From assembly GCF_902459465.1 (NCBI RefSeq), contig NC_047080.1:11470001-11534000 (forward strand): a stretch of 64,000 nucleotides of DNA, read 5' to 3'. The translations under genes were made by a program, and so were the position numbers. Shown here piece by piece: positions 16,401-50,100 of this stretch (position 1 is the stretch's first letter; the number at the start of each line of letters is the position of its first letter). Under the pieces are notes generated by a model. It worked only from the letters and a program-made list of their open reading frames with translations, was not told the DNA's origin and made no database searches. Source of the stretch: Asterias rubens. Lineage: Eukaryota.

Positions 16401-19400
16401 TAAGTATGCACAGAAAATGGAATAGCCCAGAATATATGAATATGTAATTTAGCAGAAGTTTCTAAAATCCCAATTTTTCTCATGCGGGTTTCGTGTTTAT
16501 GAATTACACAAATCAACATAAAGAATCCACAAATTTTATTTCCCACAGAATCCATTCTGACATTGGATGGAATCATGCTTTCTGAAAGTTAGAAACTGCC
16601 ACAAAATTAAGAGGAAGTATAATAATGTGTTTTTTTCTCCCAAATTTAATTTACACACCAAGTGATGATGCAGGACAAAACAAACGTTCATCAGGTGCAA
16701 AGTATTATATGATCTTTAAGAGTATTACCTAGAAAGTTAAAGAAAGCTATTTATGGGGTAAACAAAGAATGATCTCACTATAGAGTGTGAGGGGACCGTA
16801 AGAGGGCATTGGAGGTCAATTAATAAAATCTTGCACAAAAATAAATTCAAGGTTTATCAAGTTATACTACAGGACTTCCCATAAGCCTTTTGGAGGTATG
16901 GCGAGTGATAGGGGTGTACTGCTTGGTTTGGGTGTATACACTCAAATTTACCCAAACCTTATAGTGTTGTAACATTGTGTCCGCCATGAGGTATGGCGGA
17001 CGTGATAGGAGTGCACTGTTTGGTGTGGGTGTATACACACAAATTTACCCAAACCTTATAGTGTTGTAACATTGTGTCTGCCATATCTCATAAAAGGCTT
17101 ATGGAACAGGCCTTCGTGAAGAATATGACTGTTTCCAAATTGGTCGCTACAGCCTCTAACTGGGTGAGCCAGAACTAGCCACCAATTTGGCCACAACCTA
17201 ACTATCTAAAACATGAGCAAAATTGCCTCTAAAGTGTCTCCGGAAATAAAACCTCAAATGATGGATCAGGAAATAAAAGTACTTACGGATCCTCCTCATC
17301 CCAGAGCTGTACATCTTCAGTGTCAACAAGATCAACTTGCTTCTGAGCATGAAGCAACTTCTCATCCCGTGGCTGCTCATCCTCTGGATCCGATGACATC
17401 ATCTCCAACACTGGCATGATGGATGGCCGGCGCCCTCTGTTGGCAGCGGCTGGCATCAGGAAGCCGTTGTCACCGTCCTCGCCCGCTGGGGGCATGAGGT
17501 GGTTGCGATCCATGGAGGAGGTGCCTGCCATCATCTCCAGGGAGGTACCTGAGGGGGAATGGAGTGGAGAGGAACGAAGGAGATATGGGTACTCTAAAGG
17601 GAGGCGGAGGAAGACGTGATGTTTGAGACGGAGAGAAACAAATATAGAGACGTTTGACGAGGAAGGACAACTAGACTTACAAAGACAGTACACTACACTA
17701 AGGTCCACTACACACACTGCTCTGAGCTGAAAACACATCCACAAATAAGTAAGCCTTACACAGTGAAGAAAGTAACTAGCTAACTAATTTAGCTAGAAAG
17801 TAAGAATTTTAAACGATGTTCTGAGGTAAACAAGAGACTTTGAAGCAACACGTTCACTCTCATTTGGGACTGGTTATGCTATTGGGAAAGCTAGAAGTCT
17901 GAACATGTCTATGCACGATTGACTCTTGGACTAAATTGCGAGGTTACGACGTCTGACCTCCTCCACGATGATTGGGTCAGGTGCGTCAAATCTGAACCAA
18001 TATATCCCCTCTCTTCGGACACATGAATGTGATGCTTGATGTACGTTAACTAGCACAAACCAAAATGACAGGTGTTTAGTAAACAGGTGCTAATTAATAC
18101 CTGACGATTCTCTACCTTCAGGGGACATGTAACTCTCTCTTGCTTTGGCTGGCCTGGTGGTTGCTGATGCCGTAGGGGATCCTGGTTTCCCACCGATGTG
18201 ATGCAACTCCAGTGCCAGTGTCCCTACGCTAGCGATGGCACTCTCAACCTTGGTCATCCCGCCGTTCTCAGGCGGCACATAATTCGATGTCTTACTGCTG
18301 TCTGTCTTCTCCTTCTGCTGATCCTCACGAGGATGGCGTAAGATGAAGGCGGAGTTCTCCTCCTTAGAGATGTTCATGTAGAAGCAGATGTCTGTACTGC
18401 GCATGATGTGACGGGGGCCGGGATTGAGCTGGATGGTGGCTCCCTCGTCAGTCTTCTGGATACCTATAAGGGCCACTCCGAATCTGAAACAAGTACATAA
18501 CAGACTTAGTGTGTGAGAAGCGCTTAAGTTATTATGTGATGTGTGTGTGGGCAAGTTTAACATAAGACTTTAGGCTATGTATTGTGGAAACAAACTAAAT
18601 ATTAAGTAAGGTTTGCGGTGACACCATGTAAAATCTACTATGTGAGTAGTGGTGGCTCTGAGAAGAGCCAGTTTGTTCTGCTCTAACAGACAAACTTGTT
18701 CTGGAGCACAACAAACTGGGTCTTAGCATAATGATGTACTTACTTTTTGTGAGCGTGGAATGATGCATAAGTAAAGCTCTTGCTCTCATATTCTCCAAAG
18801 AATCTACTGTCACCAAGCTTGATGTGGTACACCTCGTTGCCTGAACATCGTCCGTATGTACGCTGCCACTGAGAATTGGAATCACTGCCTTCCCTGGGTA
18901 GCAGAAAATCATAAAATTGTTATCTTCACAAATTTGTTTGTTATGAAACTAACAACTTCAATTTTGAGACTTCAAATATCAACAAAAGGATTAAATGGAA
19001 TTATAGTAGCACAGGACACCCTGAAGCTTACTCAGGGTGAGATTTGCATTCTTAAATTTTTAAACCAAAGATGTAGAGGCAGAGAAGCTTTTTATCTTGG
19101 TGATAATGTCCAAAACTGTACCGCTGGTCCTTAGAACATTTTTCAGCAAATTTACACTTTTTTCTTCTTCATCAACTCAGTGAATAAGGGACCAACATAT
19201 AGTATTGACATTTAGATGTTTAAAAACAATTATCTGATAACTATCTGAAGACTTCTAGTGGCAATAAATGAGATTAAAAGGCAGAATATCGTGGCTGTAC
19301 TTACTGTCCCCTTGAAGTGTGTATGAGTAGGGTGACGAATGTTGAGGTGGCAGGACAAAGACAGTTGTTGGCCAATAAAGCATATTTGAATTCATCCTCA

Positions 19401-22400
19401 CACACCACATGGTCTGGAAATAGACATCAACCGTAGTTAACAAGACAGATTACGTAGCAACATAACCTGATACTATTGAATTTATTTGTTACTTTCTTGT
19501 ACTGGAACAAATTTAGCAATCCTATAAAAACATTGTGCCTTATAGTGTTAGATTCCACCTAAAAGAAATGCATTTTAAAACAGGCGATAATATGTTTTCA
19601 CATAGGCCTACTATTTGTTTTTTCTTCCAACCACGCTTGATCCATATCAAAACCAGGTACCTCTTGCCAAACTCAATAGCAGGTGTATTTGCAGATCAAA
19701 TAGATGAGACAAAGAAATTAAACAATGCCGCCTAATTAGGGTATATTTAAGGGCATATCAGAATTGGCAGCTACATCTATAAATATTGCTAAAGGTGGTT
19801 CCTAAGGTAATCCTATACTTCATGAATGATGGCATGGCAATAAGCCTTTTTGAGGTATGCCGGACGTGATACACAGCGTCTCGTCACACGCCGCGACTGA
19901 TGCCACGCTCACCATGTTGGTGGTCATTATGTTTGCGTGTAAACGCCGCATCGCCTAAAATGCACACTTCACTGAATAACATACGTTCTATTTCTATGGT
20001 CAATGCGCACAAATTTACCACAACTTTACAGTGTTGTAGCATTGTGTCCGCCATACCTCAAAAAGGCTTATGCATTCATAGCCATAGCTGTAACCGCAAA
20101 TTCCTACAGATAACAAAAGATAAGTGTTTCTAAAAATATTAAAATGTTAATGTGGAGTGAAATTTACTGAGAGTTCAAAGTTACCTGCAAACTGCACATG
20201 GAATCTATTCTCAGGCTTGAGAATCTGGACATACAACGACACATTGGGGGCAAAATCCTTGACTGACCATGTTCTTAGAATTGTCTGCTGATCCTGCAAA
20301 AATAAAGAGCCAAGAAAGCTTATTCATCTCTTAACTTATAACTTCTCTAAACAAGATTTGAAAACATTGGTTTCTCTCCCCGACTTTCACCTCTGTGTCC
20401 CTGCTTCAAATCCCAGCTCAAACAAGAGCTTTTCTTATGGCTTCAACCAGAGATAAATTTGGGTAAAGGAACATGAAACCTGCATTTCTAATTTAAGAAT
20501 AAGTTGAAAAGTGATTTGGAAATAACAGGGTGCTTATTTGAAGGTTCCCTGTGAAGCTAAATTACCGCAATTTGAAATACTCAACAGAAGTTTTAACAGT
20601 TTTCCTACAAATTATACCAATCTGTACCAGTTATCTTCATATCGTGTGAGTAATTAAGGTTTAGTAGAAATGAAAATGAAATCAATCCGCATGCAGACCA
20701 CAGTTCAACTTATAACATTGATTGTTTTAAACACAATTTTAGTAGAAGAGTTTATCAAGCCCTTCTAAAACACTTTAAAAAAACTAACATAATTGCATTC
20801 AGTACATTCCACGTTTAGATAGCAGACAGATAATCTTTTAGGTATTACGTACATTTTTTAACTTTTATTCTACATGCATGCAAATCATCATTTCTGGATA
20901 TATGTTTTCCAAGGCTTATTAAAAAATCGCCGTAAATAATCAGGAAAAAAGAAGAAAAAAAGAACTACAATGCATATGCCTGACACTAACTAGCTACTGA
21001 ATAAGTTCAGGGTAGAATGTTTAATGAGTCAATAAGCAACATTTTAAAAATTAAAATGGGTGCAATTATTATAATTTTGCCCTTTGAGTCAAAGAGTTAA
21101 AAACCCTTGTTGGTTAAGATTAGGTAACAACAAAACCGAGAAAAAAAGAAAGAAAACAATCTAAATAAACAGAATCTAAAGAAAATGCACACAAGGTTTT
21201 AAGGAACACGTTGCCTTAGATCGGTCAAGTTGGTCTTTGAAAAGCATTTGTAACCGTTTGTTAAAAAATGCATATGGTTAGAAAGATAATTTAAAAGTAG
21301 AATACAATGATCCACACAAATTTGCCTCGAAATTGCGTGGTTTTCCTTTTACTTTGCGAACTTACATGATCGGCCATTTATGGAAGTCAAAGATTTGACT
21401 CCCAAAAATGGCCGACCGTGTTAGTCGACGAGGTAAAAGGAAAACTACACAATTTTGAGTGATACTTGTGTGGATCATTATATTCTACTTTTAAAATATC
21501 TTTCTAACCATATGCATTTTATAACAAACAGTTACAAACGCTTTTCAAAGACCAACTCGACTGATCCAAGGCAACGTGTTCCTTTAACTTCAAAAGATAT
21601 ACTATTGTTTGAAACACATTTTCAAATTATCATTCAAATGTTTCAGGATTTGGTGTAAGATGCACTTATTGAACAGTGAGGGTACTCAAAAGATTGTGTA
21701 CTTTCAATGGCAAGCAGCTCAGCTCTTACAGCCAAATATTACTGTTAAGTTTCGGCATAGCAAAAGAACCAATTCAAAATGTGAACATTTTCATGGGGGA
21801 ATATAAGCTGTAACTACTTGATGAAGTGTACCATTGTATTAATCAATTATTGTCAAATCATAAACACCTTTAATTAGTTTCCCACTTTGCTACAAATTTG
21901 TCCCAAAACACCATTGAAAATTGTGCAGAAAAACTTAATTGTTGTAAATGAAAAATATGTCATTTATGATAGTAAAAAACATTTGATCCGCTCTAACAAA
22001 ATAGTTCCAAAGTCACAAGTCATCTTAAGTCGTATTGTGTCAGTAAGAAAGTTATGATTGTTTAAGAAGCCAGAACTAAGAAAGTATGAACTTTGGACCT
22101 TAAAAAGTGAGAGTGCATTGACTGATCACATTTCACCTGAGTGTACAAGGATTGTGATTGTATCAAATCAAACAAAAATAAAAGAACAAAAATTAAAAGA
22201 AAAGATCTGAGATTCATCTTCCTCCTTGCTCTCTCCTGACCAGAGAAGGAATCAACCTTGAGCCTAGCAACCAAACTTAACACATGAAGAGAAAAGAGAT
22301 TTTGGAAGGGGAGTCTGAATAGAGAGTGGTTGAATACTATAACCAATGTCGCAGTCATGAAAAACACCACCAAAATTGAGTACCCCCAAAGAATGCACAC

Positions 22401-25400
22401 CAAGATAGAAAGAAAGACACAGGGGCCCATTTCATAGAGCTGCTAACGACAAGGAAGGATGGTTAAGCGACATAATCCAGGGGTTAACACAAGTGTCCAT
22501 TTTACCTGGCAGATCTTAGCAAAGTTTTTGAAAGCAATGAATTGGGCAATGGTTAGACAGCTGTCCATGGCTCAATTTGTTATAAAGCTGTTCAGCAAAA
22601 AATTATGCTTAGCAAAATTTTAAGCAAAACTTTGTAGGGAACCAGTCACAAACAATGTACATAAGATATTTTGGCTGGTTACCTGTTTCTGCCCAACAGC
22701 ATTTTTCCTGCTTAAAAACCACATATGAAATTGGGGTTATATGGATAAAGCAACCAAGTATTGCTAAGAAGGGGAAATGCTTAGCAAACCCTAGGTACCA
22801 GTTGCTGGGAATAACAGGTAGTCTCGCACTGAAAGTAGGTAACTAGGGACCACCGTGTTTAATACAACACCACGATCCAATTTCATATAGCTGTTTGAGC
22901 AGAGAACAATAGCCCAAGAGTAGCAAAATTTCCTCTTTTCTTTCACTAGTATAACTACTTCTTTTAAGCAAGTTTTGATGATGCTAACCAGCTTTGGGAA
23001 ATTGGACCTGTATGCGGCCAGGATGATCCCAAATCAGGTCAAGTTGACTTTACTGGTTAACTGAAACGCTTTAAGCAGGAATATTTGTCTTAGCAGCTCT
23101 ATGCAATATGGCTCCAATCACAAGGCACACAGAGTGCTTACTATTCTGTCTCTGATCGTATTGGTAGTGGACGCGCCAAGACTTGGGTGTGGGGGTTTGC
23201 TAGGCTCCTGGTGGAAGAGAGAGAGCAGGGAACGAGAAAAATCAACACAGGACAGAGAGCATGCTTAGTCAATCTTTCATATAGACTTTAAAAGCGTTTT
23301 AAATGCACGTTACTTATGCAACTATGCCCCCCGCTCAGACCACTTGCCCCACTGCTCCCGCACAAACGACTAGTTTGATACATTAATTATCCCCGAATAT
23401 ATGTCTTTGCCCTTGCTTGTCCCCTCCCCTCCCCAAAAGAAAATGTCTGCATGGTTACACGACTGAAATGCATTGTATGACACAAAACTATTTCACACCT
23501 AAAACACATGCATGTAAATAATGCATCTACGGCTGTACTACTAAAATGACAATAGACCTTATGCATTGACGTCATTCAGCCGCTATCTTTGAGGTCAAAG
23601 GGTGACGAAACAATCGAAACGCACATAGATTGGCCAATGAACAACCTCCATTTGACCTCAATGCGGGGGCGCCGTACTGAAATGACGTCATGTGCATAAG
23701 GTCTATTCTACAGCTACATGACAGTACAATGACACTAGTTATTAGTTTAACCAATGAATGTTGTCCTTTCTGAGTCTTGTGAAAAACTCCACAGGCCTAT
23801 CACTCATAATACATCTGTGATTTTGTTCCACAAGACTCACAAAGTACCTGCCGTTGATTTCACAAAGAGTTAGGACTCGTCTTATCTCGAGTTTTAGGAA
23901 GAATAATTCATCCTAACTAAGGATTCATCCTAACTAAGGATTAATCCTTATGCTACAAGTCTGCATGCTACAGTGCAGGGCTGGGACTCGTCCTAAGTCC
24001 TAAGATTAATCCTAAGTTATAAAAAGAGTTTTGTGAAATCAACGGCAGGTATATAGTGCTTGACACAAGTAAAACACAAACATTACTCTTTATCCCCATG
24101 CAAATGTAATATCTATTAAAAGTATAAGTCACATCTCCTGGACCCCCTGCTAGACATGCTTACAACAGTTATCTCAACACTTCTCGCATAAATTAACAAT
24201 AGTTGAAAAACAACCAAACCCTCTAACTTCTCAAAACATTTTCATTACATGGTTTGCTCAAACATTTAACTTCAAAAATTTATCTTAATTTTTTTTTTAA
24301 AATCAGGTCTACGTCAAGAAAGGGAAAAGGGCAATGGAGGAAAAATGCCTAGGCCTAATTTTTTTTTGAAATGAACAAGACAGGTGTGAATATAAATCCT
24401 GGAATTTTACCCAAAAGGGGAAAATAATATGAAATTAATTCCTCTCTGGGTAGAAAAGTACACATCAACCCTAGGCCAGCACGTACACCAATAAACGGAC
24501 CATAAAACAACAAAAACCAAGAAAGAAAAAAAATGTGAGGAGAAAAGGTGGGTAAGTAAATACTGATTTATCTACTCCACAGACTAACAAATTTTCTGTC
24601 GGAAGAGCTCTTTGCAATAAGTGGGACATTTATTGGACATTTCCACCCCCGAAGGACGGATTGAAACAAATTAAGTCGAAGAAGAGTGGCAGTTCATATT
24701 GACTTCATAAGATGGACATAGCCCCCTCTTCCTACGTTCAAATTAAAGAGGCTGAGTCGTCTTTGATTTCAAATTGTCTAGTTTTTAAATGACAACTTTT
24801 GGATGAAAATTGGATGAAATCACGAATTTGAGCATCCGAGGCATTGAGAATCTATCTAAAGAGTTGATTTGCCAACAGAAGGTAAGGGTGATATTTTCAA
24901 AAACAAACAGACACACCGTCAAACATTTTGGGTTGTAGCTTGGTGCTTCTAATGAAGTTTTTTTCACAGAATGAGGGCAGAAATGAAGGCACAGCAAACA
25001 TTGAGCAAAGTGCTGCCCCAGATTCCATCCCTTTGTCTGCTAATTTCTTGTCCCAGATCTCGCAGGGTTGGGGTGCCTCAAGCAACAAACACAGGGAGGG
25101 AATTGATTGCGCCGTTTCTGACGGCATCTCAAAGTCTACATTGGAAGAATGAAGGCTGTGAAAAACTTCCCTGTGCATTCTGGATGGTCTTGCTCTTTCA
25201 GGACAATGGTGACCACAACTGTGGTTTTGGTAAAGATGACAATTTTCACCTAAAAATGTAACAATTTATGTCTCTCACCAACAGGCCAAATTACATCTAA
25301 ACACTGTCCTTTTGAGAGTCAAACTTTGAATGAAGATAACAAAAACCAAACTGTGTTCAAACGTTTCTTGCTTTGATGTACAGTTTGATTTTTTTATTTT

Positions 25401-28400
25401 TTTATTTGGAATGGAATCCATACCATTTAAATCATGCGGTATATGAATTCTAAAAATACAGTTTTCAAAAGATAGTGAACGAGGATTATGATTTACATGG
25501 TGATTGATCAGAAACTAAAAATACGATGGAAACGGTCAGCTTGTAGTGAGCTAAAGTGAACTATTGTAAGTTACAAACCGAATCATTTTTGAAAATAACA
25601 AGCCTCAAGCTAGAATCCTCAAGGCATTAATTATGAGCAAAAGTTTCACAGCGCTGTTTTTATTCAAAGCATGGAGCTGTCTTGCTGATGTACTTCAGGA
25701 TATGCAATGCTGAGGGCCGAGATGGTTCTTGAGATCGATTAAGCTTGATGCGCTACATATTTATAAGCACAGGCTGTATAAACTCTCACTGATGGTTTAA
25801 GATGGTTTAAGGAATGAAGTTAATGGCCCAGTGACCAGGGGTGATAATGTCGGAGCGCCATAAGCGTCACTGAGTGACAGATAAGAAGCAGCTAGAACTG
25901 TTATTATTATCATGACTGCCTTTCATACCGAAAAAACTAATTATCGATGCTTAGCAAAAATATTTTAAGCAATTCTTTTTTTGCAAAAGCAGCTCTATGA
26001 AATTGGGCTCTGCTAATAAGCATGCAAACTTTCACAAAGGGTTTATCCAACTATAAAATGGCATATGGAATATTCCCCTGCAACAAGTTCCCCACTAAAC
26101 TGTTTTCTTAATTTCTAAGCACATAAAAGTTCTTCTAATTTTCAGCTCATTTGTGTCATTCTATCCAAGTCTAAATTTGTAAGTTAAATTTAAAGGTGTA
26201 CATGTTTACTTACTGCATCAGATCTATCCATGACATTCCGCGGTGACAAAATAAAACACGCCTGAGCAACATTGATCCTGTGAAAATAAAAAATTTCCAA
26301 AAATGCATGAAAGAAAGAATAACTTAAATACTTCAAAGATAGAGCAAATACCTGTAGAAATTTGTTTTATTAGGATTGGAGCAGGCAATCAGCGGGCTGC
26401 AAACAATCTTTACTGCAACCAAACTGAAATTGTTTTGTTTTGTTGTATTTTCGTCTTTTGAAATTTGTCTTCCTTTTTCAGTATTGTTTTATATTAATAT
26501 ATTGTTTGTTGTGTTCAAGGCATTCCGTTTATAACCTTTGGCTTATTGTGTAATGCAACCACTTAGTAGTTTTCTTGTAACAATTGTTTTGTTTTAAGTA
26601 CGTTATTCATGTGGAAATTAATAATTCTGAAAAGTGAAGAAAAGAAAAGAAGAAAAAAAATGGTTCCAGAGTAAAGCACTGCCAGCTAGAAGAGTGTTGG
26701 AGCTTCCAACCTCTCTCAGAACAAATCGGCAACCGGTAAACACCCTGACAGCATAAACACAAACCACACATGAAATAGCAGCCCATCCTCTCCTGAACAG
26801 CCTTTTAGGAGAGTTCAAGATTCAAAATAAGAAACAAGATTCGGAAAGGAAGCTGTACCTGCATCTGATGAGGTCTTGATCTTTTAGGACCGATCCTTGT
26901 ATGTAGACGACTCTCTGAGCCCACAGGGGTACCTGAAGGAGGGCTCTAAGCGCATTGTCCAGCTCACATGGGGACACCAAGACGACTGAGTAACCCTGAA
27001 ACACACAAAACACATTACAAAAGTCATCATAGTGGATGAAAATAGAGGTGCTCTTGATAATCCTGCATATAGTCAACCTTGGTTTTAATAGTTCAAATTA
27101 AAAGTATTCTTTTAAATAATTTAAATTTTACCCTTTCAGTTTACCTTTAAGTTCATAATTCTCATTAGTCTTCCTGTAACAGCACTATGCATTTTTTATA
27201 TATATTTTTTATCATCTATTTTTTTTTTTTTTTTTGCGGGGTGGGGGGGGGGGTAGAGTCATTCAGATCTTCAGGTTTTAAATAAGTAACAATTCCGCCC
27301 AACCTGTGTCAATATTTTCAAGAAAAGCTGAAAACATGTTTTGAAAATCAACGAGATTTCTATGTAGGTCGCAGTAGTATAAGGCTTTTGCCACTTTCTT
27401 ATTGAAAAGCCATCAGAAATTGGTTGATAGTAGCCTTATGAAAACATTTAATTGTATTGTGTCTGACAGCACACATCCTCTAAATTTATTGGCTGTATTA
27501 TTAGTTTGCGTGGGCGAACTTGCTCCATTTTCAGTAAAAGAAATCTGTACAAATTTAATCTGTAAAAGCGTTAATTTTTTTGTGATAGATCATTTAGCTG
27601 ACACAAAAAGCCCACTTCCAATAACATGTTATTATCACAAAGAAATATAAGAACGATAACAAATAAAGGCAAATTGCAACAACGACATAAGTAATAAGTA
27701 GAAATTCAAAGGCTGCAGAAATAGTTCATTAAATAAACGAACACAAAAACCAGCCCCCTCGTAATTTGTCATCGTTTTCACAAAGGGGCAAGTATGATTT
27801 TTTAATGCCTGTCCCATTGTATAAATGTTGACGAATTTAACCGTCATAAAAGTATTCATTGCCTTTTCCAAATTATTTCGAATATTTTCTAGGAGTAGTT
27901 AAAGGCAGTGGACACTATTGGTAATTACTCAAAATAATTATTGGCATAAAACCTTTTTTGATGACGAGTAATGGGGAGAGGTTGATGGTATAAAACATTG
28001 TGAGACACGGTTCCCTCTGAAGTGCCATAGTTTTCAAGAAAGAAGTAATTTTCCACGAATTTGATTTCAAGACCTCAGATTTAGAACTTGAGGTCTCGAA
28101 ATCAACCATCTAAACGCACACAACTTTGTGTGACAAGGGTTTGTTATTTTATGCATATGTTGAGATACACCAACTGTGAAGGCTAGTCTTTGACAATTAC
28201 CAACAGTGTCCACTGCCTTTAAGGAAAAATGATTACAAATTGATTTTCTTCATATGGTTGACTTACATTCAGAAGGTTGTGTGCATAGAACTCATTGAGG
28301 AAATCTGTTATGAGATCATACTGTAGGATTGTAGCACAGACTACAACATGTTTCCCGGACTCAGCTCGATGCTGGCTGTATGTACCTCCTTGTTTCTGGC

Positions 28401-47100: not shown

Positions 47101-50100
47101 AATTTGTATGGGTCTATTATCTATCAATCCTTCAATTTTGCCCAACTGCATGTCCGAGTGAGATTTTGATATTGTGCAACAAAAATAAATAATAATTTTC
47201 CAAAAGCGTTTCAGAATTATTCTTTTTCTGTGATAATCTAGAGAAATGCTGAACAGGGTGAAATGAACATCTCAAATTGAAATAAATTTGTTTTAACCTT
47301 TCATGGCTGTTGAATATGATAAATTCAAAAGATAAATAAATGAAACAAAGCGAGCGGGAAACACTGCATTGATCAACAGCTGGAAACAAGCTGTGACATT
47401 CATCATAAAAAGGCTGATAATTGAAACTTCATTTCAATATCAATGCATAATTCATTTTTTTCAATCAGCCAAAACGGCCTTCACCCCAAGTCTATATTTA
47501 TTTTTCCCCATAAATAATGAGACTGAAATAAGATCAGGATTAACATACGGATATAAAGAAAGCTTGGTGAAGAAAACAAGAAGAACCTTTTAGGGATATG
47601 TTTCGACTGATAATTGTCAAAGTGAAAATTATATCGGTTCTTGCTCACGTGCTCAAATTTAGTTTGATGTTTCATCCCAACTCTTCAATATTTCATTGAA
47701 TTGTGAATGTAATATACTATAAATGTAACATGAGTCTGCATCTACCTGTACAAGTTGACATCAGCCCCATATACATGGTGCTAACATAAATCATTTATGA
47801 ATCTATGTAATAGTCAGAACTCGGCCATCTGCGATAAAATGCAACAGGACACTGTGGCTCAGGCCGTACAAATATCATCAACATATCATTTTTTTTTTTT
47901 TTTTTTTTACACAGCGCAGCCTGCGCGCAGTTTCCTCGGCTAGTATGACAAAAGAGGGGAACAATAGCAAGTAATAAAAGCTAAGGTTGTGTGTACCACC
48001 ATACACGCAACTAAAAATATAAACATTTGAAATGAAAAAGCAAAAGAGAGAAATGGCAGCCAGGCTCACAAAACTGTGTTGTGTTTTCTAGTTTTCTATG
48101 ACTCTAGTCGATTTAAAAAAAATTGAATTTAGTCATAATTTGCGATGAGAATAACCAACAAACAATGTTTGAGGAATGCCCTTTTCAATAATTATTTAAA
48201 AAGAAAAAAAAGAGTTGAGTGAGGTATTTTTTTCATACAGACTCACCTGATTGGATCCTCTGCTCCTGAAAGGTCATTGTTGTCTAAAGAAACGCGAATG
48301 ACGTATAGAACACAGGATAAGAACTTGATCAAAAGATTGAAGAGCCGAATACGGACACCTGGTGTTTAGGAGACAAAAGGGAAACAATTGTTAAACCATT
48401 GTTAATGATAAAAAACAATACAGAGGCACTAGGTACAATCAAGTTGCATGGACCATTGGACAACAAGCCTACCAAGTTGCATGGACCATTGGACAACAAG
48501 CCTACCAAGTTGCATGGACCATTGGACAACAAGCCTACCAAGTTGCATGGACCATTGGACAACAAGCCTACCAAGTTGCATGGACCATTGGACAACAAGC
48601 CTACCAAGTTGCATGGACCATTGGACAACAAGCCTACCAAGTTGCATGGACCATTGGACAACAAGCCTACCAAGTTGCATGGACCATTGGACAACAAGCC
48701 TACCAAGTTGCATGGACCATTGGACAACAAGCCTACCAAGTTGCATGGACCATTGGACAACAAGCCTACCAAGTTGCATGGACCATTGGACAACAACTAA
48801 TAGTACATTGTATTACCCCCACTTCCCCAAGCTACCCACCCTCCATCCCCAAGGTGTAATTGCTTCAGGAATTTCAGGGAAATCTATTAGGCATATAAAA
48901 TGCATTTCCATCTCGGATTGGACCAAACGGTCCCATGACACTTCTTAGTCAATTAGCTGAATCCTTTCCTCACCAAAATGGCAATAAAAATAGTTCTTTC
49001 CCGTACTTTCAGTCTGTTATCATTTATTGGACAATTGGTGTCCTGGCCATCTCAAAGAGTTGCCCAGAAATAAATCTGTCAGACAACTAGTACTTAATTT
49101 GATTTTGGAGATGAAGAGAGGCAACATGTATAGCTCATTCAACCTGCTTTCTGGTTGCCGAGCTCAAAGGAAATCTACCAGAAGTGTGAACGTGTTTATA
49201 CGCAAGATGATGCTGGAGATAACTAGTCTATCTTTCAAACCCAAAGGGAGCCTCTTTTGGGATTTCAAGTCTTACTGAAAATATTTGAGTTTATTCAATA
49301 CTAAGAGTGTTTGCCTGTTTAAATAAAGTCTGAAATTGGTGATTTCCTCTACTCATACAAACAAACAAGATTTAATCAGGAACAAAACAGCATTTGTGCA
49401 TTATTTAAACAATTGACACATATGATTTTGGCCAGAGTAAATTGCATGCAGTGCTAATTCGAAAATAAATTAAATTTTAATGGGTTCATCAGACCAAGGA
49501 AACACTGACTGCCTTTGATCACTTTAAATTCTACGCATTCTATAAAATGATGGGGTTAGTCAGGCTAGGTCTAGTAAAATAGGCACGTCTCAAGTGCATA
49601 AATACAGACTTCGCTAGGGAATTCATGCACTTACATAAACTGACTCGTAAGTCTGTTCGCTAAAGATTCATTGTGTAAGTCAAACAATATGAGCCAAGGG
49701 AACAGTGGCTTAAAAGCATCGTTGTCTCTAAAATGGTTTTCATTGTTAGAACTTTATGAAAGACTTTCTGAGAAATTCATTTTCTATTTTTAAACAGGTC
49801 TTGAAATTGGTTTTGAAATTGGTATAATAATAGGATTTTAAGACATGGCTTTAAATATTTCTTACTGAACCTCTGAAATATGCATATATATAGAAGAGAG
49901 TTGAGTTTTCAGATAGTTCAAGCTTAGATTTGTTCATTTATGGTAGAGCTATGGCACGTTATTCCGGAGGTCACAAACCCCCCCAAAAATCAAGAAATAT
50001 CCAAACCACAGCATGAGTTTGGATTCAACATTGATGGAATGTTACCACCCACTTTATCTCCTCTCCCCTGCACTTCATAAGCATCTACAAGATGCATCCC

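What the first reader, a model, noticed from the sequence alone, without database searches (positions are those of the whole stretch)
23142..23270. 66-nt in-frame cassette exon inserted in RCK1 just ahead of the gain-of-function hotspot helix
Seen: an approximately 45-nt pyrimidine tract ending in CAG, 22 open codons ([22 protein letters not shown]) and a GTAAGC donor, inside the phase-0 intron between ...DRSDA and [15 protein letters not shown] lies just upstream of the tract. Established (recalled human KCNT1 numbering): the junction corresponds to A467/D468, immediately before H469, R474, W476 and A477, where epilepsy gain-of-function variants cluster; GCAUG is the Rbfox motif core. Inference: an alternatively spliced Pro/Ser-rich insert that could modulate gating. 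I know of no equivalent vertebrate exon.
Basis: partly seen in the sequence, partly recalled or inferred. Interest (0 to 1): 0.75.

Follow-up and report, generated by a model that had tools for sequence, protein, structure and literature searches.

The report
Annotated optional exon in starfish Slo2
The 66-base stretch is a genuine optional exon of a starfish sodium-activated potassium-channel gene; public gene models already include it, and its counterparts in other echinoderms and an acorn worm show it is ancient, but its effect on the channel is untested.

Summary
On the minus strand, 23207-23142 is a 66-nt open, phase 0-0 exon ([22 protein letters not shown]). It has a pyrimidine-rich CAG acceptor and a GTAAGC donor, and lies in the 5.9-kb intron between ...DRSDA and DQQTILRTW.

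The window is the Asterias rubens Slo2/KCNT gene. RefSeq isoforms X1, X2, X4, X5 and X6 already contain exactly this peptide, and X7 lacks it. Asterias amurensis models show the same with/without pattern.

Homologous optional inserts at the same junction are annotated in a brittle star (14 aa), a feather star (28 aa) and the acorn worm Ptychodera (30 aa). I found intact, unannotated orthologues in Patiria (28 codons) and Acanthaster (29 codons). There the exon is the best-conserved block of the intron.

Between the two Asterias species the exon lies in the longest perfect run of the intron: 271 nt, against 94% identity overall.

The junction equals human KCNT1 A467|D468, seven residues before the R474 hotspot.

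Not supported: the Rbfox idea, since the single GCATG is at chance frequency and not conserved. Not obtained: direct junction reads, because intronic repeats swamped my one read-laying run. Any effect on gating is inference.

Verdict: real, ancient in Ambulacraria, already annotated, functionally unstudied. Earlier scan notes covered other optional exons of this gene, not this one.

The parts
26214..26277 (-). Upstream constitutive exon (64 nt) encoding ..[21 protein letters not shown]: strand beta-D of RCK1 and the start of the loop. Donor is gtaagt.
   Evidence: sequence; matches A. rubens RefSeq proteins; aligns to human KCNT1 up to A467.
23208..23267 (-). Acceptor flank: about 45-nt polypyrimidine tract ending CAG (23210-23208), and a single GCATG at 23264-23260.
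   Evidence: 60/60 nt identical to A. amurensis. The GCATG is not conserved outside Asterias.
23142..23207 (-). 66-nt phase 0-0 cassette exon encoding [22 protein letters not shown] (residues 435-456 of RefSeq isoforms X1 and X2).
   Evidence: sequence; present in A. rubens X1, X2, X4, X5, X6 and A. amurensis X1-X5, X9; absent in A. rubens X7 and A. amurensis X6-X8; orthologues in Patiria and Acanthaster; contig word depth is raised over this bin only.
22997..23141 (-). Donor GTAAGC (23141-23136) and a 145-nt downstream intron flank, perfectly conserved between the two Asterias species. Candidate splicing-control sequence.
   Evidence: part of the 271-nt perfect run 23267-22997, the longest in the intron (next longest 134 nt; intron 94.3% identical overall). 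GTAAGCACTC is shared by all four sea stars.
20185..20293 (-). Downstream constitutive exon (109 nt) encoding [36 protein letters not shown]: helix alpha-D, carrying the equivalent of human R474, then strand beta-E.
   Evidence: sequence. D468 onward of human KCNT1. D, I, R, W and D of this helix are invariant in 57 Slo2 sequences.

Best explanation
This is a genuine, alternatively used cassette exon of the Asterias rubens Slo2 (KCNT-type, Na+-activated K+ channel) gene. The gene's whole coding sequence lies on the minus strand of the window, 58369-10279.

When the exon is included, 22 residues enter the RCK1 domain between strand beta-D (ACFILS) and helix alpha-D (DQQTILRTW...). That is between the residues equivalent to human KCNT1 A467 and D468.

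The exon is old. Homologous optional exons occupy the same phase-0 intron in sea stars, a brittle star, a feather star and an acorn worm. They share a C-terminal motif, (I/L/Y)R(D/N)(R/K/Y)(I/A/Y), and often a basic middle. In Asterias the acceptor seems to have moved about 18 nt downstream, which trims the ancestral ALTLxK start.

Inferred, not shown: the conserved last ten or so residues rebuild the N-terminal turns of helix alpha-D, and the Pro/Ser-rich first half is a flexible spacer. Inclusion would therefore lengthen the beta-D/alpha-D loop right in front of an invariant Asp and the R474-equivalent Arg. This probably shifts the gating equilibrium or ion sensitivity, or adds a regulatory site. 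Inclusion is probably controlled by the strongly conserved intron flanks.
For: Shown:

- Exon anatomy and splice signals.
- The window encodes A. rubens isoform X1 exon by exon.
- RefSeq isoforms with and without exactly this peptide exist in A. rubens and A. amurensis.
- With/without isoforms at the same junction exist in Amphiura filiformis (AYTSNVGQRIRNKI), Anneissia japonica (ALLKNWKRKKRLSEKLESIINRSYRDRA) and Ptychodera flava (30 aa ending SLRNYY).
- Unannotated open orthologues with cag/gtaagc sites exist at Patiria L001:15296-15379 (28 codons) and Acanthaster L002:63007-63093 (29 codons).
- These are the top-scoring conserved blocks of otherwise unalignable introns: Patiria vs Acanthaster 82% over 105 nt, E 4e-22; Asterias vs Patiria 31 nt at 94%, E 7e-8, spanning the exon end and donor.
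- The 271-nt perfect A. rubens/A. amurensis block is centred on the exon.
- In RNA-type contig sets X1 and X3 the exon's 200-nt bin has word depth 24.4 and 7.2, against 0-2.2 in the neighbouring intron bins.

Supporting the inferred mechanism:

- The junction maps to A467|D468 of the solved human KCNT1.
- The Asp after the junction is invariant in 57 Slo2 sequences.
- The same column aligns with BK ...ADPDAE|DASNIMR, and with the RCK2 loop ...EEDYMA|DAKTIV that carries the D884/K885 Na+ switch (PMC11309980).
- AlphaFold2 with the insert gives residues 101-122 below pLDDT 50 and a helix from insert residue 13 (S121) onward, 121-144. Without the insert the helix starts at R105.
- In BK channels an optional exon in RCK1 (SRKR, site 1) reduces activation (PMC13674577).
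Against: - I saw no junction-spanning read or contig. The joints table of my only read-laying run was filled by three intronic repeat families.
- Raw RNA run X10 put a few reads on both flanking exons and none on the cassette. That fits skipping but is too thin to count. Run X11 had no reads on the gene.
- RefSeq isoforms are automatic models, and I could not inspect their evidence.
- Protein conservation inside the exon is modest: Patiria vs Acanthaster about 57% amino-acid identity at 82% nucleotide identity. Part of the constraint may therefore act on RNA rather than on the peptide.
- The AlphaFold confidence over the insert is low (pLDDT about 37-59).
- No functional data exist for any of these isoforms.
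Confidence: 0.85

Rival explanations
1. The exon is real and optional, but its peptide is a tolerated surface spacer with no direct effect on gating. Its value would lie elsewhere, for example a docking or phosphorylation site, trafficking, or conservation driven mainly by RNA-level splicing signals.
For: - The first half is Pro/Ser/Thr-rich and predicted disordered.
- Length and sequence vary widely: 14, 22, 28, 29 and 30 aa.
- Nucleotide conservation exceeds amino-acid conservation between Patiria and Acanthaster.
- Intron flanks are as conserved as the exon in Asterias.
- Several orthologues carry basic-x-Ser motifs (RKNS, RQRAS, KRLS); I only read these by eye.
Against: - The C-terminal motif next to helix alpha-D is kept from crinoid to sea star.
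- The insertion point directly precedes an invariant Asp, at a position homologous to ion-sensing loops in BK RCK1 and Slo2 RCK2.
Confidence: 0.3
2. The exon is constitutive in Asterias, and the models lacking it are annotation artefacts.
For: Most annotated isoforms include it: 5 of the 6 listed for A. rubens and 6 of the 9 listed for A. amurensis. In contig set X1 the exon's depth is at least that of the flanking exons once scaled for covered length.
Against: - Skip isoforms are modelled independently in two Asterias species, Amphiura, Anneissia and Ptychodera.
- All eight Acanthaster models and the single Patiria model skip it although the exon is intact there.
- X10 reads touch both flanking exons but not the cassette.
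Confidence: 0.07
3. It is a chance pseudo-exon or a recently exonised repeat that is not used.
For: A 5.9-kb intron offers many AG...GT pairs, and the intron contains abundant repeats.
Against: - It is annotated in RefSeq.
- It is conserved with an open frame across more than four species and three echinoderm classes.
- It lies in the longest perfect block of the intron.
- There is no repeat-like depth and no repeat family at the exon.
Confidence: 0.01

Closest known systems
RefSeq isoforms of A. rubens 'potassium channel subfamily T member 2-like' (X1 XP_033642764.1 and X2 XP_033642765.1 with the insert; X7 XP_033642770.1 without)
   Same: Identical peptide at the identical junction. The window encodes these proteins.
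   Different: Nothing differs. These are automatic models, and I found no paper describing the exon.
Optional inserts at the same junction in Amphiura filiformis, Anneissia japonica and Ptychodera flava KCNT-like models
   Same: Same phase-0 intron, with-insert and without-insert isoforms, a GTAAGC donor in Anneissia, and the shared C-terminal motif ..R(D/N)(R/K/Y)...
   Different: Lengths are 14, 28 and 30 aa against 22. The middle parts are lysine/arginine-rich rather than proline-rich. Asterias appears to use a downstream-shifted acceptor.
BK channel (KCNMA1) site-1 'SRKR' optional exon in RCK1
   Same: A short optional exon inside RCK1 of a Slo-family channel that changes activation (PMC13674577).
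   Different: Different gene and a 4-aa insert. I did not test whether the position is the same. Its effect depends on phosphorylation of a nearby serine.
Mammalian KCNT1 (Slack) splice variation
   Same: Same channel family.
   Different: From memory, the described mammalian variants (Slack-A and Slack-B) differ at the N-terminus. None of the vertebrate sequences sampled here has an insert at A467|D468. Vertebrates keep the intron at this spot: short-intron read-through ORFs P0001-P0006 show it.

Membership tests
Frame-preserving alternative cassette exon | Canonical acceptor (pyrimidine tract + YAG) and GT donor | tested here: met
   82% pyrimidine over 40 nt, CAG, GTAAGC.
Frame-preserving alternative cassette exon | Length a multiple of three, open in the frame set by the neighbouring exons | tested here: met
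   66 nt, phase 0-0, no stop. Orthologues of 84 and 87 nt are also open.
Frame-preserving alternative cassette exon | Transcripts that include the exon | tested here: inconclusive
   RefSeq models include it, and RNA-type contig depth is raised over the exon bin. No junction-spanning read or contig was seen here.
Frame-preserving alternative cassette exon | Transcripts that skip the exon | tested here: inconclusive
   RefSeq X7 (A. rubens) and X6-X8 (A. amurensis) skip it. X10 reads lie on the flanking exons only, but there are few of them.
Frame-preserving alternative cassette exon | Exon and flanking intron conserved above the intron background | tested here: met
Slo2 / KCNT Na+-activated K+ channel | Pore domain plus two Slo-type RCK domains, and close similarity to solved KCNT1 | tested here: met
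   Precomputed Pfam hits PF07885, PF22614 and PF03493 on the A. rubens protein. E 1e-91 to human KCNT1 8hir over RCK1. Na+ activation itself was not tested.
Rbfox-regulated exon | Conserved (U)GCAUG in the flanking introns | tested here: not met
   One GCATG at -57, none within 300 nt downstream. Background is about 0.5 per kb per strand. It is absent upstream of the exon in Patiria, Acanthaster and Anneissia.
BK site-1 (SRKR) type RCK1 insert | Same structural position and phosphorylation-dependent inhibition | not tested
   Known only from the review PMC13674577; the position was not mapped here.

The most novel reading that the evidence does not exclude
The cassette is a gating module more than 500 million years old and specific to Ambulacraria. 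It is inserted one residue before the invariant Asp that aligns with the BK RCK1 calcium-site aspartate, and it is the RCK1 counterpart of the RCK2 Na+-switch loop. Inclusion would measurably change Na+ sensitivity or open probability, giving a natural handle on why the R474 helix is a gain-of-function hotspot.
Probability: 0.3. Interest if true: 0.55.

Novelty: already known. Interest (0 to 1): 0.3.

Why it matters
For annotation, the exon adds nothing new in Asterias. It does show that the Patiria and Acanthaster gene models miss an intact, conserved optional exon.

For channel biology, it is a natural, evolutionarily retained insertion next to the KCNT1 R474 hotspot helix, at a loop homologous to ion-sensing loops of BK RCK1 and Slo2 RCK2. 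Comparing the two natural isoforms would be a cheap way to ask how the geometry of this loop sets the closed-open balance of Na+-activated K+ channels.

Tried and rejected
- **Read laying on 20254-26253.** Three intronic repeat families (21054-21653, 23454-24053, 25654-26053) drew tens of thousands of reads and filled the joints and loose-ends tables. No splice junction could be read; only bin depths were usable. The cap is one call.
- **Search with the 79-aa spliced peptide.** It returned only vertebrate genomic ORFs that read through the short homologous intron. These show that the intron position is shared, but no starfish transcript fragment came back.
- **The search of protein representatives with exon 18093-18479.** The hits were mostly fragments. 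It served only to reach the sea-cucumber protein P0056.
- **Orthologous DNA.** The Amphiura, Apostichopus, Antedon and Lytechinus genes were too long to fetch, and S. purpuratus was withheld. Whether sea urchins and sea cucumbers keep an unannotated copy is unknown.
- **Rbfox control.** Rejected as unsupported.
- **Exonised repeat.** Rejected (conservation data).
- **Poison or NMD exon.** Rejected: the exon is frame-preserving and has no stop.
- **Literature searches.** No description of this exon was found in the held library.

Full report
**1. Observation.**

On the minus strand the window carries three relevant exons.
- The upstream exon is 26277-26214, ending ...[21 protein letters not shown]|gtaagt.
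- The downstream exon is 20293-20185, starting cag|[14 protein letters not shown]....
- Between them lies a 5,920-nt phase-0 intron.

The candidate is exactly as described.
- The acceptor is a pyrimidine-rich tract ending ccaccag.
- The exon is 66 nt, 23207-23142, encoding [22 protein letters not shown].
- The donor is GTAAGC at 23141-23136.
- A GCATG sits at 23264-23260.

The window contains no N.

A mechanical scan shows the site is unusual. Only 9 YAG sites on the minus strand, and none on the plus strand, have at least 80% pyrimidine in the preceding 40 nt. Several of these are true Slo2 exon acceptors. Only two such acceptors have a GTRAG donor within 200 nt, and this is one of them.

**2. 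Identity of the gene.**

tblastn of fetched proteins shows that the window encodes the complete Asterias rubens 'potassium channel subfamily T member 2-like' protein. Isoform X1 (1240 aa) maps exon by exon from 58369 to 10279 on the minus strand. Earlier scan notes had named the genome as a starfish, A. rubens, and this agrees.

The RCK1 region matches solved human KCNT1 (8hir) at E 1e-91. The alignment places the junction at A467|D468, so the R of TILR is R474. R474C and R474H are recurrent hotspot variants (PMC6878841).

**3. The exon is already in public gene models.**

The 90%-identity cluster of A. rubens and A. amurensis proteins was listed.
- A. rubens X1, X2, X4, X5 and X6 contain exactly [22 protein letters not shown] between DRSDA and [10 protein letters not shown]7 (XP_033642770.1) lacks it.
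- A. amurensis X1-X5 and X9 contain the identical peptide. X6-X8 lack it.

From general knowledge of NCBI's pipeline, alternative isoforms are modelled from transcript alignments. I could not inspect that evidence.

**4. RNA evidence obtained here is indirect.**

My single read-laying run covered 20254-26253. Three intronic repeat families attracted most of the reads and filled the joints table, so no junction was visible.

The depth table still helps.
- In the RNA-type contig sets X1 and X3, the 200-nt bin holding the exon has word depth 24.4 and 7.2. The neighbouring intron bins have 0-2.2.
- The bins holding 40 nt of each flanking exon have about 10-11 in X1.
- Raw RNA run X10 gave about one-fold cover on both flanking-exon bins and none on the cassette bin. 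That is compatible with skipping but rests on only a handful of reads.
- Run X11 had no reads on the gene.

**5. Conservation.**

*a) Annotated homologues at the same junction.*
- The brittle star Amphiura filiformis has isoforms with and without a 14-aa insert, AYTSNVGQRIRNKI.
- The feather star Anneissia japonica has them with and without a 28-aa insert, ALLKNWKRKKRLSEKLESIINRSYRDRA. Its exon is L003:35557-35640, and its donor is also GTAAGC.
- The acorn worm Ptychodera flava has them with and without a 30-aa insert ending SLRNYY.

*b) Unannotated orthologues in other sea stars.* The models of Patiria miniata and Acanthaster planci lack any insert, but the orthologous introns contain intact exons.
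- Patiria L001:15296-15379 has 28 codons, ALTLRKNSKHDPSDKKQGVSSNTIRDRI, with cag and gtaagc sites.
- Acanthaster L002:63007-63093 has 29 codons, ALTLGKDLKTDPSHKRQRASLLSTLRDRI.

These blocks are the top BLAST hits between otherwise unalignable introns.
- Patiria vs Acanthaster: 82% over 105 nt, E 4e-22.
- Asterias vs Patiria: 31 nt at 94%, E 7e-8, spanning the exon's 3' end and the donor.

*c) The two Asterias species.* Their introns are 94.3% identical in aligned columns. The longest perfect run is 271 nt, twice the next longest. It covers window 23267-22997: 60 nt upstream, the exon, and 145 nt downstream.

*d) No insert elsewhere in the sample.* None appears at this junction in the 226 other Slo2 proteins fetched, from vertebrates, protostomes, sea urchins and a sea cucumber. 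Vertebrates do keep an intron at this position.

**6. Evolution of the Asterias version (inference).**

The Valvatida exon begins GCC TTG AC. (ALT...). In Asterias the corresponding bases lie in the pyrimidine tract. The Asterias CAG|GAG aligns with Acanthaster AAG|GAC, 18 nt into the exon. The acceptor has apparently shifted downstream, which removes the ALTLxK start. The (D/E)PS...(S/T)N/T.(I/L)RDRI remainder is kept.

**7. Control elements.**

The single GCATG, 57 nt upstream, is shared only by the two Asterias species. No GCATG lies within 300 nt upstream of the exon in Patiria, Acanthaster or Anneissia. The background is about one GCATG per kb counting both strands. The Rbfox idea is therefore unsupported, though not excluded.

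A different element stands out. The octamer TGTCGTTT occurs only 0-2 times on the gene strand of each whole locus. Yet it lies 26-42 nt after the donor in Acanthaster, Patiria and Anneissia. Asterias lacks it.

**8. Where the insert sits, and how it may work.**

AlphaFold2 models of RCK1 with and without the insert gave mean pLDDT 67.5 and 71.1.
- Without the insert, strand beta-D (ACFIL) is followed by a short loop, and a helix starts at R of DRSDA and runs through [14 protein letters not shown].
- With the insert, residues 101-122 fall below pLDDT 50.
- With the insert, a helix of 24 residues starts at insert residue 13 (S121). The last ten or so insert residues ([10 protein letters not shown]) are predicted to form the new N-terminal turns of the helix, at low-to-moderate confidence (about 59). 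The Pro-rich first half is unstructured.

The Asp right after the junction is invariant in 57 Slo2 sequences.

HMMER alignments put the junction at two informative homologous positions.
- It matches BK ...ADPDAE|DASNIMR. By the BK numbering I recall, that Asp is D367 of the RCK1 Ca2+ site.
- It matches the paralogous RCK2 loop ...DKESTMSAEEDYMA|DAKTIV. That loop contains D884/K885, described as the Na+-dependent activation switch (PMC11309980).

The most likely mechanism, by inference, is that inclusion lengthens and re-caps the beta-D/alpha-D connection in front of the hotspot helix. That would shift the gating equilibrium or ion sensitivity. The BK site-1 SRKR exon in RCK1 does something comparable (PMC13674577). 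A purely regulatory or spacer role is the main rival.

**9. Novelty and verdict.**

The exon exists in the public annotation of this very species, so the feature is already known as a gene model. I found no paper on it.

Four things are added here.
- The exon is ancient, shared across Ambulacraria.
- Two sea-star annotations miss it.
- Its flanks are under strong constraint.
- It maps precisely onto the KCNT1 and BK structures.

Function remains untested, and interest is modest.

Noticed in passing
L001:15296-15379 (Patiria miniata) and L002:63007-63093 (Acanthaster planci): Intact 28- and 29-codon orthologues of the cassette, with good splice sites, are missing from all RefSeq models of these two sea stars. 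This looks like an annotation gap.
   Followed up: yes
L002 about 63135, L001 about 15415, L003 about 35666 (26-42 nt after the cassette donor): The rare octamer TGTCGTTT (0-2 copies per whole locus on the gene strand) sits just downstream of the cassette donor in Acanthaster, Patiria and the crinoid Anneissia, but is absent from both Asterias loci. It is a candidate ancient intronic splicing element.
   Followed up: partly
window 21054-21653, 23454-24053, 25654-26053: Three intronic repeat segments attract hundreds- to thousands-fold RNA read depth on both strands, with many inverted and skipping joints. They are probably abundant transposon-derived repeats. They swamp read-laying on this intron.
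   Followed up: no
window 23208-23230 compared with L002:63007-63024: The Asterias acceptor appears shifted about 18 nt downstream of the valvatid sea-star acceptor. The ancestral first six codons (ALTLxK) have become part of the pyrimidine tract.
   Followed up: partly
L001:16024-16095 and L002:63682-63757: A second conserved intronic block lies about 650 nt downstream of the cassette: 82% over 76 nt between Patiria and Acanthaster. It was not detected in Asterias.
   Followed up: no
window 48332-48812: A long tandem repeat of a 33-nt unit lies in an upstream Slo2 intron. It reads as [11 protein letters not shown] repeated in one minus-strand frame.
   Followed up: no
proteins P0001-P0006, P0008-P0010: The protein database holds many short 'proteins' that are prokaryote-style ORF calls reading through the short vertebrate KCNT1 intron at this same junction. 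They are artefacts, but they show that the intron position is shared with vertebrates.
   Followed up: partly
window 23142-23165 compared with 26214-26237: The cassette's end (NTIRDRI) resembles the end of the upstream exon (NVMDRSDA), and HMMER aligns RDRI onto human RTAA. The cassette may replace the helix N-cap, or descend from a partial duplication.
   Followed up: no
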